A stretch of 63,859 bases of DNA, filler included, from Hyphochytrium catenoides (taxonomy: Eukaryota; Protista; Hyphochytriomycota): the NCBI GenBank assembly GCA_900088475.1. It is 13 parts of 13 records of this genome, joined end to end, with 100 filler letters (N's around TTAATTAATTAA, not from the genome) between each part and the next. Parts side by side here need not be neighbours in the genome. Positions count along the whole stretch, not along the records: positions 1 to 9,344 come from FLMG01004155.1; 12 more parts are not named here. One strand, written 5' to 3'. The stretch's first letter is position 1. The number at the start of each line of letters is the position of its first letter. Position numbers and translations under genes: made by a program. The notes under the pieces were generated by a model. That model ran no database searches and was not told the DNA's origin. It worked only from the letters and a program-made list of their open reading frames with translations. Shown one piece after another: positions 1 to 9,344 of the stretch.

Positions 1-116
1 TGTAGGTATTCTTATTTAGCTGGTCTCTTTCTCTTTCTCTCTTGGTAAAGTACTACTTGTAGCTTTGCTGATCACACCGTCTCTCTTTCCTTTCTCTCTA
101 CCGCTCTCTTCTTTGA

Positions 117-237
117 CAATCTATCTCGAGGTCTTTCCCTTCTCCTCCTCCTCTCTTTATGTTGTCCTCATATCTTTCTTTGGCAATCTATCTCGAGGTC
201 TTTCCCTTCTCCTCCTCCTCTCTTTATGTTGTCCTCA
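117..237. repeat. Direct tandem duplication (54-bp identical core, 67-bp period)
   Basis: caatctatctcgaggtctttcccttctcctcctcctctctttatgttgtcctca occurs at 117-170 and 184-237. Confidence 0.95.
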
Positions 238-952: not shown

Positions 953-1552
953 ATGGCCAAGAGTTTCACCTTCTCTCTGTGCCTCTTGGCTGGGGCTCTC
1001 TGCTCTCTCTCTGCTCCTGCCGCGGCTCACCCTCCCCGATATGATTACGTCAAGTCCTGCTATCACTCCACGCATACGGACCTAGAGGTTAAGCCTCTGC
1101 TTGAGATTTGCCTCATCAATCCTCATCTACAAGCTCAGGATGAAACGGAGCTGAGACTAACAACTATGGACTTTTCCCTCGCCCGGAAAGTTCGTCCCTT
1201 CGGAACGGAAGGCACGAGTCTGTTTGCGTTTATCTCCCTCGGCCCTGATCAGGCTGAGAAGAAGAAGAGCGACATGTTTAAGCTCTTCTATGTCTCGTCC
1301 TCTACGGACAATTACGCCACTATCCACTCTCGAAGTATCAACGGAGCTTTCACAATCTTCAAGGGACCAGTGGGCATCCAAGAACGGATGTACACCGAGA
1401 CACAGTTCATGAAGAATGCAACTTCATTAATAGATATTGCCGGAGATAAGAATCTGAAGGTGAAGATCCTCGGAGTGGATGAGGAGGGCAACGTCAAGCA
1501 GAGCTGGGATTATGCTCTGAAGGACATGCAAAACGGCCCCGTGAGTTCTTGA
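953..1552 (+). CDS. Intronless 199-aa putative secreted protein of unknown function
   Basis: ATG-to-TGA ORF with non-repetitive, protein-like composition. The N-terminus MAKSFTFSLCLLAGALCSLSAPAAA|HPP looks like a cleavable signal peptide (AxA site). Confidence 0.75.
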   Translation: MAKSFTFSLCLLAGALCSLSAPAAAHPPRYDYVKSCYHSTHTDLEVKPLLEICLINPHLQAQDETELRLTTMDFSLARKVRPFGTEGTSLFAFISLGPDQAEKKKSDMFKLFYVSSSTDNYATIHSRSINGAFTIFKGPVGIQERMYTETQFMKNATSLIDIAGDKNLKVKILGVDEEGNVKQSWDYALKDMQNGPVSS

Positions 1553-3867: not shown

Positions 3868-3898
<31 letters not shown>

Positions 3899-3912
3899 GA
3901 GAGAGACAGAGA

Positions 3913-3943
<31 letters not shown>

Positions 3944-3945
3944 GA

Positions 3946-3976
<31 letters not shown>

Positions 3977-4120
3977 CCAAAGGGAAAGAGAGGGCAGTGG
4001 GAGGTTAGGGGAAGGGGAAGAGGAGGGTAGAAAAGGGAGAAAAAGGGAATAGGAGGTTCTTTTAGTAACGGCTCCCTTCTCCTTTAGAGTAGGGTTCAGA
4101 ATCTCTCTCTTTCTCTCTCT

Positions 4121-4172
<52 letters not shown>

Positions 4173-4210
4173 CTCTCTCTTTCTTTCTCTCTCTCCTCTC
4201 TTCTCTCTTC
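3868..4210. repeat. (GA)n microsatellite followed by a (CT)n microsatellite
   Basis: GA/GACA run at ~3868-3976 and CT run at ~4103-4210. Many similar tracts occur across the window (e.g. 5346-5400, 10737-10790, 11709-11833, 53660-53702). Confidence 0.95.
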
Positions 4211-5127
4211 TCACTTGGTGATCTTTCTTTCACCACTCATCCTCTCTCCGTCATTACGCTGCTCCCTCGTTGCTAACCCTTCCTCCTCCTCTTTTCTCTC
4301 CCAATTTGATTGTTGTTGGCCCCTTCAGCACCTTCCCTTCGCTCGCTGTAACGGACAACAGACCCTTCTGTGCTTCTTCAGTTCCTCTGACACGCCAGCA
4401 GACCCGCAGACTGCTGAGGTTGCTTTCTTTCTTTCCTTTGTGCATCTGCTGTCCAGCAGGCCATGGGCGGGCGCCGTGACGAAGAAGTCTGGGAGGAGGA
4501 GGACATAACTTTTTCGAGGTCATAAGAAAAAGAAGCTCAGACTGTGGTGTCTGCCGATCGTGAGGCGTAACGGCGTTAGCTGGCTACTACGAGGATAGCG
4601 GCTCTAGATCTGTCGTAGCTGTAGAGAGGGGAGAAAACGGGGAAAGAGAGTAGTAAGAAGAGAGAAGATAGAAGAGAGGAGGACAAGATAAAGAGAGACA
4701 GAGAGAGAAAGAAAAGAAAGAGAGAGAGAGAGAGGGCTGAGAGACAGAGAGGGAGAGAGAGACAGAGAGGGACAGAGAGAGAGGAAGAGAGAGAAAGAGA
4801 AGAGACAGAGACAGAAAGAAAGAAAGAAAGAGAGAGAGAGCCGAGAGCAGAGAGAGAGAGAGAGCAAGAAGTGAGGGGCTCGTTCTCTGTTATCGTCACC
4901 CTCTCTTGACTATGCGCCTGGCCGCCTGGCCCGCAGCAAGAAGGCCCAAGAAAGTAAAAAATGAACTTTGCCTTTTAACGTCTGTTACTGTCAAATGTCC
5001 TCGCTCATGTTGGCCCCATACAGTGACACCGAGATTGCCCATCACCCAGGAAAGGGAGAGGGAGAGAGAAAGAGGAAAGGAGGGATGCAGGAGGAGGGCA
5101 AGGACACAAGAGGGACAGAGAGGAAAC

Positions 5128-5158
<31 letters not shown>

Positions 5159-5343
5159 AGAGAAATATGCTAGAGGATATGCTTATGGGTCCTCTTTCTT
5201 CGTAGCCTCCAGACATCAGAAGGGATACTCCGCTATTTCCATGTACGATGATTGCCCAATCCAGATTGACGTAGCGAAGAAGGTAGACGAGAGAGTGAGG
5301 ATGGACAGGAAAGAGAGGAGAAAGAAAGAAAAGAGGTAGTGGG

Positions 5344-5393
<50 letters not shown>

Positions 5394-5999
5394 GAGAGAG
5401 AAAAGAAGGGAAGGAAGCTTGTTGTCTCTGTCACTACGCAAGGCGACAACGTAACCGTCAGCACAGAGGCTGAGAGAAGAAGAGTGACCATTCTAAGCAT
5501 CTCTCTGTCAAGTTCCGGGGCAGTTGAAGCTGGAGAGACACCAGCGGCTGTGGGCACGATGGCCTACGACTTTCTTCTTTCTTTAGCCTAACCAGCGCTT
5601 CGTCCTCCTCTCTCTCTCTCTTTCTCTTCTACTCTTTCTCCCTCTCTTTCTCTCTCTGTCTCTCTCTCTATGAGGCTCTGTTGCTTTCATTTCCTGAACG
5701 CCGTGAGAGACAGCAGCAGCAGACGGCGCTCGTAGCAAACAAGGAGTTGGGATTAAGAGAGCAGAAGAAGAAAGAGAGGCAATACGATGTTCCTTCTCCA
5801 TCTGTCTTTCCTGACCATGTAGCTAACAGTTACGGTCGGCAATCGCTCCTCAGTTTGGCATAGTTCCCGGTTGCACGTCTTTCAGAAGAGAGAAAGAGGT
5901 CAAAGAAGGAGAGACTCACAGATCGCAATCTCCTTTGCATCAGAGTTCACAGGCCAGCGCGGTTAGTTTAGAAGAGAAAAGCGAGGGTAGTAGAGAAAG

Positions 6000-8900
6000 A
6001 TGAAGACTCTCTCCCTCTCTCTTCTCCTTCTCTTGGCGCTTCTTACCTTGGCAACGGAGACTATCGATGGAACTTCTTCTTCTCCCAGCACTGTCGGTGC
6101 ATCTCCCGCGGCAGATGTCCTTGCGATCAAGGCTGTGGGCACACCGTTGACTGCGCAGCTCTTTCCACGCCTTGCCCGGATGTATCGGAGCGTTGCTATT
6201 GACTCTGAGGATTCTCTTTCGATGGTGGACGTTGACTATGACGACAAAGGGTCATTCCCTGCACGGGACGACCTGCTGGTCAAGCAGACAGCCCATCTTG
6301 CCGTGTTGGACTACATGCTACCTCCACAAGACTTCAAGACCTACCGCGACCTCGTCATGCTTCCATTCGCGGCAGCGGCTATCGTTCCTATCACCAACAT
6401 CGCAGAGCTTGGAGAAGGAGAGCGCATTGTGCTCTCCAGAGAAGTCCTCGCTGACATTTTTCAGGGGAAGATCCTTCATTGGGACGACCCGGCCATCCGC
6501 AGCCTGAATCCTAACGTCCCTCTTCCTCCAGAGGATATCAGGGTCATCGTCCCTGCAGTCGTTCAGCCGGTTACGGATACATTCACAGCTGCTTTGAGCG
6601 CCTTCAGTCCGGACTTTGAGGCAAACATTGGACGGTCACCGCTTCCAAACTGGTGCCGGGGAACAGCAGTGAGGTCCACCTCCGCCGACTTGCCTTATAC
6701 GACCGTTGTCTGCCAAGAAGGTAACAGTACGCGCGAGTTCTATGAGACCTTTGGTCTTGAGCCACGGACGGCAGCGGTAAGAAAAGTATCATCGTCCTTC
6801 TTCTTTTCTCTTTCCTGTTCTATTTTTGCCATCTCAGAGGCAGAAGCATCATCGTCTAACAACAGCTCTCTCTTCCGTGCTATAGTTCTCAATCTTGCCG
6901 TACGCAATCTCCTTTATGTACCTGACGGAAGCTATTGAGCGGGGCTTTCTCCCAGCCAAGCTTATCAACAAAGCTCAGGCAACGGTCACACCGTCCGTAG
7001 AGTCCACTACCAGCGCGTTGATGGCCGTAGAAGGAGTGTTTGACGGTCGATACAACGCGACACTAGTCGATACCGCCGCACCCGAAGGCTGGCCTATCGC
7101 GGCTATTTCTTACCTGACTCTACGAGGAAGGACTCATCTTGACGACTGCGTCCATCGAAAAGGCTTGGTGGACCTGTTTAGCTGGGCACTCAGCCACCCA
7201 GAATTTGTAAGGCTTGCCGGAGCCTCAGGCTTTGCTGTTCTCAGTGAGGGGTCACGCCTGAAGACGGTCTCTCAGCTGGTGAAGGTGGTTTCCTGCGTAC
7301 GGAACTGCTTCGGCGTGCCAGCGGCCATCTGCACGTGCATTGGCTCAGGGCGTCGATGCTCTATGGCCGGTGCGGTCTCTACTGATAATAAGAAGCTTTA
7401 CTTGGGCTATCCAACCTTTATCCAGTACTCTGTGGACGTCTTACTGGACGCCTTCAGTGCCAGAACAGAGTATGAGCTCATGCCCTTTGCAGACTGGAAT
7501 GAGGAGGATAGCCTTATGTTTGCGATGGTGGCGTCCGACACTACCAATGGTTTGGACTCTGGCCTCTTGTCAACGAGAAAGCTTCTCTCCTCAACGGCTT
7601 ATAACGAGACACTAACGGAGCTTTTGAATGCCAAGAGAGTGAGCATCACGCCGCTGTTCATCGGCACTATCGCTCTCATCGCCAGCCTAGACAACGTCAC
7701 GACCATTAACCTCACGCCGGAGCTGTTGGCTGACATTTACTTAGGGAAGGTACAGAGGTGGAATGATGCAAAGGTCCAGGAGTTGAACCCTGGCTCTCCA
7801 TTGCCGAACCTCAATATTACGCTGGTTCTTGATGTTGGCGCCAGTGAGATATCGAGGGCCATCTGCACCTATTTGTCAGCAATAAGCCAAGACTTTGCCG
7901 CCGTCTTTGCCAAGACAAGGAACCTTAACATGCTCCGTACCTTTCACTCTCGCGTGGTAGAGACACCTTCTTCTCGTGCATTGGAAGGCATGGTTAACAG
8001 CGTTAAAGGTGCTCTCGCTGCAATGTGGACAAGATCAGACGCCAATCTCCGGAAGAAAACCACAGTCTTGCTTGCTGCGGTCGGCGGAGATTCCACACGG
8101 CAGCCAGTAGGGCCTTCCATCTCTTCTATGAACGAATGTCTCGAGGGCTTGGGGTCTAATGCACTCGAAGTCCTCTCTCCCCATGCTATTCTCTTCAAGA
8201 ATCTCTCAGTTTACGGCTGCTATCCTCTCTCTATAGAGTATAACCTTGTCGCTAAGCGTCTCTGGATGGCAGATGCAGAAGATAGTGCAAGGAAGAATGC
8301 GATGTTTATGGACTGGATTCTGAAGACAAATCTTCAAGGAAGCTTGGCGACCCTCTCCCAAGATATGGCAGAGGCACTACTTAGCCCTATCGCCAACAGT
8401 ATCTCCCTAGGCCAAGCCTCTGTTCTGTCTCCTCAGCCTCCGTGCAGCCGAAAGGACATGGGCTACCTTCTGTCCGCCTGCAAGGAGCGTGTGATGACGG
8501 TAAGCTTCTACTGGCTGGGAGATGAGGACAATCGAACTTGTCTGGGAGGGCAAGAGCTAATCCCAGACATTGACATTGCCTGTGAGTTTGTCCCTTCGTC
8601 CTCTTCGGTGGGATCTGGCATCATCGCTCTGATAGTCATTTGCTGTCTGATCCTCACCCCGTTCCTATGGTTTACCTTCTACTATCGGTATTCTCAAGCC
8701 CTGGTGGCGTCTCAAGTTAACTTTACGCTGCTCTTTATTTGGGGAGCGCTCCTCCTGGCCATCTCTTCTGCCTCTCTCCTGGGAGAGAACAGCGAGGCCA
8801 ACTGCGTCCTCCGTCCTTGGGCTCTCAGCCTCAGCTTCTCCGTGCTCTTTGCTCCATTGCTAATGAAGCTCAAGCGCGTGTACACTCTCTTTGGGCAGAA

Positions 8901-9344
8901 AACGTTGAAGCGCGTTGTTGTCTCAAACCTTAAGGTAGCGGCGGAGACCTCGGCTTTCCTCTTTGTGGATGTGATCATCCTTTTGTCCTGGCAGTTTGGC
9001 TCCAAGATGACCACGATGACGGACTTCGAGGCCATTGACATCGTTGGGGATGTGCCCCGGCAGGTCTGTGATTATGGGACGGACATGGGGCTCTATGTGA
9101 TGCTTCTGTACAAGGCGCTGGTCCTCGGAGTGGGCGTGTATCTCGCAGTGAAGTCCTGGGACATCGTGGAAGACTACTCAGAGGCCAAACAGCTGGCCAT
9201 TGGCCTCTACAACGCCTGCCTCATGGGAGGACTGACCCTGTTGCTAACGATGGGGATCAGCACATCGTCCAGTATCAGAGTGATCCTCTTAGCTGTTTCG
9301 TGCTGCTTAGTCTCATTCATCTGCGTGGTCCTGGTGATGACTCC
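6000..9344 (+). CDS. Class C (GABA-B-like, 7tm_3) GPCR with signal peptide, two PstS-like (type II periplasmic-binding) domains and a Cys-rich juxtamembrane module; 3' end runs into a gap
   Basis: Exon 6000-6776, phase-0 intron 6777-6885 (GTAAGA...CTAAC...TAG), exon 6886-9344, joined in frame (RTAA|FSILPYAISF). PstS-like motifs: LADIFQGKILHWDDPAIRSLNPNVPLP, GWPIAAISYL, LADIYLGKVQRWNDAKVQELNPGSPLP, CYPLS. 7tm_3 motifs: CVLRPWALSLSFSVLFAPLLMKLKRVYTLF and YKALVLGVGVYLA...YSEAKQLAIGLYN. Confidence 0.9.

What the first reader, a model, noticed from the sequence alone, without database searches (positions are those of the whole stretch)
6000..9344. Class C GPCR whose ectodomain is a tandem pair of PstS-like binding domains instead of a Venus flytrap
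Seen: signal peptide, PstS-like domain 1, a small Cys cluster, PstS-like domain 2, a Cys module and a GABA-B-like 7TM, all in one spliced frame. Known: animal class C GPCRs use a type I periplasmic-binding (ANF_receptor/VFT) ectodomain. PstS is the type II bacterial phosphate ABC-transporter binding protein, and PstS-like domains in amoebae and their giant viruses are known fused to kinases or cyclases. Inference: this is a candidate protist sensing receptor that couples a bacterial-type solute-binding module to G-protein signalling, apparently an uncharacterised receptor class.
Basis: partly seen in the sequence, partly recalled or inferred. Interest (0 to 1): 0.85.

Follow-up and report, generated by a model that had tools for sequence, protein, structure and literature searches.

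The report
Protist GPCR with tandem PstS-like ectodomain
This is a real two-exon protist gene for a GABA-B-like seven-helix receptor whose outer part is two bacterial-type phosphate-binding-protein domains; the design is widespread and already catalogued but untested, and this copy has lost the usual phosphate-contact residues.

Summary
Window 6000-9344 (+) carries one gene: exon 1 6000-6776, a 109-nt GT..AG phase-0 intron 6777-6885, and exon 2 from 6886 to the piece edge, cut inside TM7. The 1078-aa product has a signal peptide, PstS-like domain 1, a 5-Cys linker, PstS-like domain 2, a 4-Cys module and a 7tm_3 domain closest to GABA-B R2. The splice rests on a gapless alignment to an intronless homologue and on an intron at the same aligned position in a distant homologue. 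No RNA run was listed.

The "new receptor class" reading is only partly right. PBP_like_2 + 7tm_3 fusions were reported in a chytrid (2012) and in Plasmodiophora (2016, there called transporters). UniProt names a Plasmodiophora tandem homologue a family 3 GPCR. About 50 of 172 retrieved relatives have two or more PstS-like stretches before the 7TM. None has been tested functionally.

In the family, the membrane-distal domain often keeps the canonical phosphate motif R-x-D-x-S-G-T, and the proximal one never does. In this copy both are degenerate (distal PAVVQPV, proximal DVGASEI). It is therefore more likely a retuned or ligand-blind paralogue than a phosphate sensor.

Verdict: new member of a known but uncharacterised kind, of moderate interest.

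The parts
6000..6776 (+). Exon 1 (aa 1-259). It holds the start ATG, the signal peptide and the first two thirds of PstS-like domain 1.
   Evidence: An in-frame TAG lies 12 nt upstream of the ATG. PBP_like_2 scores 36.6 bits and TIGR00975 85 bits. PDB PstS 5wnn hits at E 1.8e-16.
6000..6074 (+). Signal-peptide-like hydrophobic N-terminus (aa 1-25, MKTLSLSLLLLLALLTLA...).
   Evidence: Hydropathy segment 1-25. No signal-peptide predictor was available, so the cleavage site is not determined.
6777..6885 (+). Intron, 109 nt, GTAAGA...pyrimidine-rich...TATAG, phase 0.
   Evidence: Sequence. The alignment to intronless P0152 is gapless across the junction. Metagenomic homologue L001 has a 46-nt GT..AG phase-0 intron at the same aligned position. 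DNA contigs of two runs span the intron unchanged, so it is genomic. There is no RNA evidence.
6886..9344 (+). Exon 2 (aa 260-1078 plus a partial codon). It runs off the piece edge inside TM7.
   Evidence: The open frame reaches the N run. 7tm_3 profile positions 6-245 of 251 are matched.
6114..7293 (+). PstS-like domain 1 (membrane-distal, aa ~39-395, interrupted by the intron). The canonical phosphate motif is lost: aa 185-191 read PAVVQPV where PstS has R-A-D-G-S-G-T, and the T10 equivalent is Pro. The S38 and D56 equivalents are kept.
   Evidence: HMMER alignment to PstS structures; MAFFT alignment with homologues; residue positions.
7294..7359 (+). Inter-domain linker with five cysteines (C396, C400, C408, C410, C417). 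Only the first is conserved in homologues, where it probably pairs with conserved C347.
   Evidence: Cys positions; alignment.
7381..8442 (+). PstS-like domain 2 (membrane-proximal, aa 425-778). It is degenerate: aa 575-581 read DVGASEI at the R135-T141 positions. C677 and C704 are invariant in the family. The N-lobe is poorly modelled.
   Evidence: Domains 1 and 2 are 34% identical over 93 aa, E 3e-13.
8443..8583 (+). Four-cysteine module (C779, C791, C811, C825) between domain 2 and TM1. It is not NCD3G.
   Evidence: Conserved with P0152, P0009, P0023, P0025 and others, and also found in 7tm_3 relatives that lack PstS domains. There is only a weak ELAPOR1_C hit, E 0.047, below cut-off.
8605..9342 (+). 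Class C type seven-helix domain (aa 833-1078). It has seven modelled helices and an ECL2 beta-hairpin. Key residues are C899/C987 (TM3-ECL2 pair), K920 (3.50 position) and E1025 (6.35 position). TM7 is cut just where the family has P-K.
   Evidence: 7tm_3 scores 104.3 bits. GABA-B R2 alignment. Model pLDDT is 85-95 here. Foldseek hits to GABA-B, mGlu, CaSR and GPR156. Family consensus.

Best explanation
Window 6000->9344 (+) is a two-exon gene of a microbial eukaryote. It encodes a class C (7tm_3, GABA-B-like) GPCR-type surface receptor.

**Architecture.** The extracellular part is built from two tandemly duplicated PstS-derived type II periplasmic-binding-protein domains, followed by a four-Cys module. 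It belongs to a widespread protist and chytrid family that has been catalogued but never tested.

**Family logic (shown by sequence).** The membrane-distal PstS domain is the variable, often canonical, phosphate-type binding site. The membrane-proximal one is always degenerate. I infer that it acts as a rigid spacer or transmission element onto the Cys module and 7TM.

**Likely mechanism (inferred).** A ligand closes the bilobed distal domain. The movement is relayed through the proximal domain and Cys module to the 7TM, which keeps the class C TM3-ECL2 cysteines and the K3.50/acidic 6.35 pair. The 7TM then activates a heterotrimeric G protein.

**This copy.** The distal pocket has also lost the canonical phosphate contacts: R135->P, D137->V, S139->Q, G140->P, T141->V and T10->P. 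It most likely senses something other than orthophosphate, or it serves as a ligand-blind partner subunit.
For: - **Domain hits:**
- **Model and fold matches:**
- **Single gene:** the alignment across the junction to intronless P0152 is gapless. L001 has an intron at the same aligned position and phase.
- **Coding constraint:** of the 40 listed variants in DNA contigs of the same species label (26 more were not shown), 21 are synonymous and 19 non-synonymous, with no stop or indel.
- **Family breadth:** 3127 hits, 26 below 1e-30. About 50 of 172 retrieved proteins have two or more PstS-like stretches before a 7TM.
- **Named members:** Plasmodiophora CEO97692.1 and Mallomonas EP01041. Atlas clusters occur in Chlorophyta and Discosea.
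- **Motif pattern:** 11 distal domains are canonical by the anchored scan, plus P0152 and P0040 by alignment. None of about 55 proximal domains is canonical.
- **Independent loss:** the window protein is sister to canonical P0152 (support 100/99), so the loss is its own event. The tree needs at least 5 changes of state.
Against: - There is no transcript evidence for the splice or for expression.
- The 3' end is missing, so the TM7 PKxY motif and the C-tail are unseen.
- Domain 1 could not be modelled, because a spliced protein has no reference and was not pasted. Pocket inference therefore rests on sequence alignment only.
- G-protein coupling, dimerisation and the ligand are all untested for every member.
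- The organism is not identified, so the presence of G-alpha genes is unknown.
- The canonical/degenerate calls for homologues come from a regular expression and are approximate.
Confidence: 0.8

Rival explanations
1. It is a true extracellular orthophosphate sensor. Phosphate would still bind domain 1 or domain 2 through a non-canonical pocket, and the receptor would report external phosphate to G proteins.
For: Both domains are clearly PstS-derived. The closest full-length relative, P0152, and many other members keep the canonical R-x-D-x-S-G-T motif in the distal domain. The S38 and D56 equivalents are kept in domain 1.
Against: At least five of the eight canonical contact positions in domain 1 are replaced by Pro, Val or Gln; S38 and D56 are kept, and the backbone-contact position F11 reads Leu. 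In domain 2 the R135 and G140 positions are Asp and Glu, which would repel an anion.
Confidence: 0.1
2. It is a ligand-blind subunit, analogous to GABA-B R2. It would pair with a paralogue that has a canonical PstS pocket and would contribute the G-protein-coupling 7TM.
For: Both pockets are degenerate. The 7TM is most similar to GABA-B R2, and class C receptors work as dimers (established knowledge). Canonical and degenerate forms are interleaved on the tree. Purifying selection is still visible.
Against: No paralogue from this genome was available. The similarity to GB2 is low (about 18-20% identity), and GB1, mGlu and CaSR follow closely. This is analogy only.
Confidence: 0.15
3. It is a solute transporter: a substrate-binding domain fused to a seven-helix permease, as proposed for the Plasmodiophora fusions.
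For: This is the interpretation published for the Plasmodiophora homologues (PMC4815078).
Against: The membrane domain is a 7tm_3 GPCR fold with class C hallmarks: the TM3-ECL2 cysteines, the K3.50/E6.35 pair and the ECL2 hairpin. It matches only class C GPCR structures and no transporter fold.
Confidence: 0.03
4. The two ORFs are separate genes, or the locus is a decaying pseudogene, and the 'intron' is not spliced.
For: There is no RNA evidence. ORF 1 continues in frame to a stop at 6938.
Against: Exon 2 starts in the middle of a PstS fold and has no signal peptide of its own. The alignment to P0152 across the junction is gapless. The intron position and phase are conserved in L001. There are canonical GT..AG ends with a pyrimidine tract. 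The 2459-nt frame is open, and the variants show an excess of synonymous changes.
Confidence: 0.03

Closest known systems
Plasmodiophora brassicae PBRA_005806 (CEO97692.1 / UniRef100_A0A0G4IR75) and the PBP_like_2 + 7tm3 fusions of Rolfe et al. 2016 (PMC4815078)
   Same: Several PstS-like stretches followed by 7tm_3 in one polypeptide, in a protist. The genes were also mis-split by annotators there.
   Different: Identity is only about 20-28%. The Plasmodiophora protein keeps the canonical R-Q-D-S-S-G-T motif in its distal domain, and the window protein does not. The authors called these proteins transporters.
Metagenomic protein P0152 (1033 aa, JGI/IMG), the nearest full-length relative
   Same: Same order: signal region, PstS-like domain 1 with a Cys-bearing insert, PstS-like domain 2, 4-Cys module, 7TM. 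It is sister on the tree with support 100/99.
   Different: It is 28% identical to the window protein over 930 tree columns; its cluster representative P0002 is 33% identical over the matched stretch. It is intronless at this site. Its distal domain keeps R-H-D-K-S-G-T, and it has no five-Cys linker.
Animal GABA-B receptor subunit 2 and other class C GPCRs (mGlu, CaSR, GPR156)
   Same: 7tm_3 fold, TM3-ECL2 cysteines, Lys at 3.50 and an acidic residue at 6.35, an ECL2 hairpin, and a bilobed ligand-binding ectodomain of the PBP superfamily.
   Different: The ectodomain is type II PBP (PstS-like, duplicated in tandem) rather than type I ANF_receptor. There is no NCD3G domain, and a different 4-Cys module takes its place.
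Bacterial PstS (E. coli, Burkholderia 5wnn), the phosphate ABC-transporter binding protein
   Same: Fold and sequence family: TIGR00975 at 85 and 94 bits, PDB hits to 1e-16, and a Foldseek TM of 0.58 by target for domain 2.
   Different: The scores are far below the equivalog cut-off of 205 bits. The phosphate-contact residues are mostly replaced. The domains are fused to a 7TM rather than docking on PstCA.
Spizellomyces punctatus SPPG_06488 and other fungal Glutamate-family GPCRs with type II PBP domains (Krishnan et al. 2012, PMC3251606)
   Same: A PBP_like_2 domain N-terminal to 7tm_3.
   Different: I did not retrieve this sequence, so its tandem status and pocket residues were not compared.

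Membership tests
Class C / Glutamate-family GPCR (Pfam 7tm_3) | 7tm_3 profile match above the gathering score | tested here: met
   104.3 bits against a cut-off of 33.5, profile positions 6-245 of 251
Class C / Glutamate-family GPCR (Pfam 7tm_3) | Seven-helix fold matching solved class C receptors, with an ECL2 hairpin | tested here: met
   The model has seven helices and a hairpin, with pLDDT 85-95. Top Foldseek hits are GABA-B, mGlu, CaSR and GPR156. TM7 is truncated by the piece edge.
Class C / Glutamate-family GPCR (Pfam 7tm_3) | Conserved TM3-top and ECL2 cysteines, Lys at 3.50 and an acidic residue at 6.35 | tested here: met
   C899, C987, K920 and E1025 align with the GB2 residues. The generic position numbers come from my own knowledge of GB2 structures.
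Class C / Glutamate-family GPCR (Pfam 7tm_3) | TM7 PKxY-type motif | tested here: inconclusive
   The sequence ends ...VLVMT plus a partial CC (Pro) codon at the piece edge. The family consensus has P-K at that place.
Class C / Glutamate-family GPCR (Pfam 7tm_3) | Type I PBP Venus flytrap (ANF_receptor) and NCD3G cysteine-rich domain, as in the animal members | tested here: not met
   No ANF_receptor or NCD3G hit at E<=1. Two PstS-like domains and a different 4-Cys module take their place.
Class C / Glutamate-family GPCR (Pfam 7tm_3) | Coupling to heterotrimeric G proteins | not testable with these tools
PstS phosphate-binding protein (TIGR00975 / PBP_like_2) | Sequence and fold membership in the PstS family | tested here: met
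   TIGR00975 E 4e-24 and 1e-26. PDB PstS hits. Foldseek TM of 0.58 by target for domain 2.
PstS phosphate-binding protein (TIGR00975 / PBP_like_2) | Equivalog-level score (same function) | tested here: not met
   85 and 94 bits against a cut-off of 205
PstS phosphate-binding protein (TIGR00975 / PBP_like_2) | Phosphate-contact residues T10, F11, S38, D56, R135, S139, G140 and T141 (E. coli numbering, established knowledge) | tested here: not met
   Domain 1 reads P, L, S, D, P, Q, P, V at these positions. In domain 2 the C-lobe positions R135, S139, G140 and T141 read D, S, E, I.
Protist/chytrid PBP_like_2 + 7tm_3 fusion receptors | PstS-like domain(s), here two in tandem, N-terminal to 7tm_3 in one polypeptide, with full-length homology to other members | tested here: met
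   One-stretch alignments over the query's 816 aa to P0005, P0011 and P0014. P0152 has the same domain order, and Plasmodiophora P0031 has PstS-like stretches before a 7TM.
Protist/chytrid PBP_like_2 + 7tm_3 fusion receptors | Degenerate membrane-proximal PstS-like domain with conserved Cys pair | tested here: met
   None of about 55 proximal domains is canonical. C677 and C704 are invariant in alignment A1.

The most novel reading that the evidence does not exclude
The tandem-PstS 7tm_3 family may be the extracellular phosphate-sensing GPCR system of diverse protists, with a canonical distal domain. Within it, copies like this one, with both pockets degenerate, would be either GB2-like ligand-blind transducer subunits of heteromers or receptors retuned to a new ligand. 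That would be a natural case of a type II binding protein driving a class C 7TM through a 'dead' duplicated domain.
Probability: 0.2. Interest if true: 0.7.

Novelty: new member of a known kind. Interest (0 to 1): 0.4.

Why it matters
How free-living and parasitic protists sense external nutrients is largely unknown. No member of the PstS-7tm_3 family has a known ligand or signalling output.

The family pattern seen here makes concrete, testable predictions about which domain binds and which transmits. The distal domain is often canonical for phosphate, the proximal one is always degenerate, and the distal site has been lost several times independently.

This particular gene adds a divergent member (at most 35% identity to anything retrieved) with both pockets altered. 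It would serve as a natural negative control or as a retuned variant. It does not establish a new class.

Tried and rejected
- **Word-indexed protein search with exon 2** found only one kinase-PBP protein. The exhaustive HMMER search was needed.
- **RNA-seq support:** no RNA run could be listed. The DNA runs show only that the intron is genomic.
- **Upstream ORF 953-1552** gave no Pfam hit and no homologue, so it gave no clue to the organism.
- **Rfam** found nothing in the piece.
- **AFDB cluster search** returned class C relatives but with organism names withheld.
- **A search for the EukProt accession GILJ01** in papers found nothing.
- **Modelling domain 1 or the full spliced protein** was not done. 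A spliced sequence has no reference and must not be pasted. For that reason the second structure job was not spent, and coordinates are not returned anyway.
- **Pseudogene or two-gene readings** were rejected on the alignment, the conserved intron and the variant pattern.
- **The transporter reading** was rejected on the fold.
Full report
**Observation**

The + strand holds two overlapping-frame ORFs, 6000-6938 and 6895 to the piece edge. Removing 6777-6885 joins them in frame into a 1078-aa product with no stop. This segment is 109 nt long, starts GTAAGA, has a pyrimidine-rich tract and ends TATAG. The frame runs into the N filler, so the gene is cut at its 3' end. An in-frame TAG lies 12 nt before the ATG at 6000, and the product starts with a hydrophobic signal-like segment.

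**Domains**

- Pfam gives PBP_like_2 in exon 1 (36.6 bits) and again in exon 2 (26.2 bits, just under the 27-bit cut-off). It gives 7tm_3 at 104.3 bits.
- The NCBIfam PstS model TIGR00975 scores 85 and 94 bits. That is highly significant but far below the 205-bit equivalog cut-off.
- Both PstS-like domains hit solved PstS proteins.
- The two domains are 34% identical over 93 residues, E 3e-13, so they arose by internal duplication.
- The 7TM is closest to GABA-B R2 (E 1.8e-10), followed by GB1, mGlu, GPR158/156/179 and CaSR.
- The GB2 alignment keeps the TM3-top and ECL2 cysteines (C899, C987), the Lys at 3.50 (K920) and an acidic residue at 6.35 (E1025). The generic position numbers are from my own knowledge of GB2 structures.
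- An AlphaFold model of domain 2 + Cys module + 7TM has mean pLDDT 70.5, with the 7TM at 85-95. It shows seven helices and an ECL2 hairpin.
- Foldseek matches the model to class C receptors and to PstS, TM 0.58 by target.
- No ANF_receptor or NCD3G hit appears.
- The four-Cys module at aa 779-825 has only a sub-threshold ELAPOR1_C similarity.

**Gene model**

No RNA run was listed, so the splice rests on comparison.

- The spliced protein aligns without a gap across the junction to P0152, an intronless 1033-aa metagenomic homologue with the same domain order.
- Many metagenomic ORFs called by prokaryotic gene finders begin exactly where the window's exon 2 begins.
- For one of them, P0014, I fetched the DNA as locus L001. 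An upstream ORF encodes the first part of domain 1. A 46-nt GT..AG phase-0 intron lies at the same aligned residue, and removing it gives one 1358-aa frame.
- DNA contigs of two runs span the window's intron unchanged.
- Of the 40 listed single-base variants in those contigs (26 more were not shown), 21 are synonymous. None creates a stop or indel. This fits purifying selection on a live gene.

**Family**

- The exhaustive HMMER search found 3127 relatives, 26 of them below 1e-30. The best is only 33-35% identical.
- Local domain mapping shows about 50 of 172 retrieved proteins with two or more PstS-like stretches before a 7TM.
- Named members are Plasmodiophora brassicae PBRA_005806, which UniProt calls a 'G-protein coupled receptors family 3' protein, and a Mallomonas annulata protein.
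- ESM Atlas has clusters of 50 or more members with 7tm_3 + PBP_like_2 in Chlorophyta and Discosea.
- In the literature, PBP_like_2 on a fungal Glutamate-family GPCR was reported in 2012 (PMC3251606).
- PBP_like_2/SBP_bac_1 + 7tm3 fusions in Plasmodiophora were reported in 2016. They were called transporters and wrongly thought unique to that organism (PMC4815078).
- Type II PBP domains such as OpuAC on 7tm_3 are described as conserved across eukaryotes (PMC3971589).
- I found no functional study.

The architecture is therefore known but uncharacterised.

**Binding sites**

The E. coli PstS phosphate contacts are T10, F11, S38, D56, R135, S139, G140 and T141 (established knowledge). The numbering was checked against the chain coordinates.

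- Across homologues, the membrane-distal domain frequently keeps R-x-D/G-x-S-G-T. There are 11 cases by an anchored scan, plus P0152 and P0040 by alignment.
- None of about 55 membrane-proximal domains keeps it. Many carry a different recurring R-x-x-x-[S/C]-D-x-N motif.
- In the window protein, the distal domain reads P185-A-V-V-Q-P-V191, and its T10 equivalent is Pro. Only the S38 and D56 equivalents are kept.
- The proximal domain reads D575-V-G-A-S-E-I581, which puts Asp and Glu at the R135 and G140 positions.
- On a maximum-likelihood tree the window protein is sister to canonical P0152 (support 100/99). Canonical and degenerate states need at least five changes, so the distal site was lost repeatedly.

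**Mechanism**

What is shown: a secreted-type N-terminus, two PBP type II modules, a Cys module, and a class C 7TM with its hallmarks.

What is inferred: the distal domain is the sensor. The proximal degenerate domain and the Cys module relay closure to the 7TM, which activates a G protein. Because this copy lacks the phosphate contacts, it either senses another ligand or acts as a ligand-blind partner, by analogy with GB2. A transporter role is unlikely given the fold.

**Verdict**

This is a new member of a known, untested kind, of moderate interest.

Noticed in passing
window 953-1552 (+): A 199-aa ORF with a signal-peptide-like N-terminus (MAKSFTFSLCLLAGALCSLSAPAAA...). It has no Pfam hit and no homologue in the large protein collection. 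It may be a lineage-specific secreted protein or the first exon of one.
   Followed up: partly
window 3868-3976, 4102-4212, 4644-4875, 5109-5163, 5346-5401, 5608-5669: Long (AG)n/(TC)n microsatellite tracts fill the roughly 2 kb upstream of the receptor gene and switch strand between blocks. They produce the strong GC/AT-skew swings in the composition profile and spurious 'RERERE'/'SLSLSL' ORFs.
   Followed up: no
window 109-237: A 67-bp unit is repeated 1.9 times at 98% identity.
   Followed up: no
window 5900-9344 (DNA runs X1-X3): Two haplotype-like contig sets lie at about half depth each. They differ at roughly 1-2% of sites across the gene. This suggests a heterozygous diploid or mixed strains. 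Third-codon positions are enriched among the differences.
   Followed up: partly
homologues P0003-P0043 (membrane-proximal PstS-like domain), e.g. L001:3501-6095: In a large subfamily the proximal domain replaces R-x-D-x-S-G-T with a recurring R-x-x-x-[S/C]-D-x-N motif. This hints at a conserved alternative site rather than simple decay. The window protein and P0152 instead share L-D-x-x-[A/S]-S-[E/D]-[I/M]-S.
   Followed up: partly
L001:1973-6095 and the contigs carrying P0158: Metagenome gene callers split these eukaryotic receptors at the conserved intron into two or three 'prokaryotic' ORFs annotated as phosphate ABC transporter substrate-binding proteins. Neighbouring genes, such as Sec7 on the P0158 contigs, show that those contigs are eukaryotic. 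The family is therefore under-counted and mislabelled in metagenome catalogues.
   Followed up: partly
window 8443-8583 and 7tm_3 relatives without PstS domains (e.g. P0021, P0044, P0059): The four-Cys module before TM1 also occurs in 7tm_3 proteins that lack PstS domains. It looks like a shared stalk module of a protist class C subfamily, distinct from NCD3G. It has a weak ELAPOR1_C resemblance only.
   Followed up: partly
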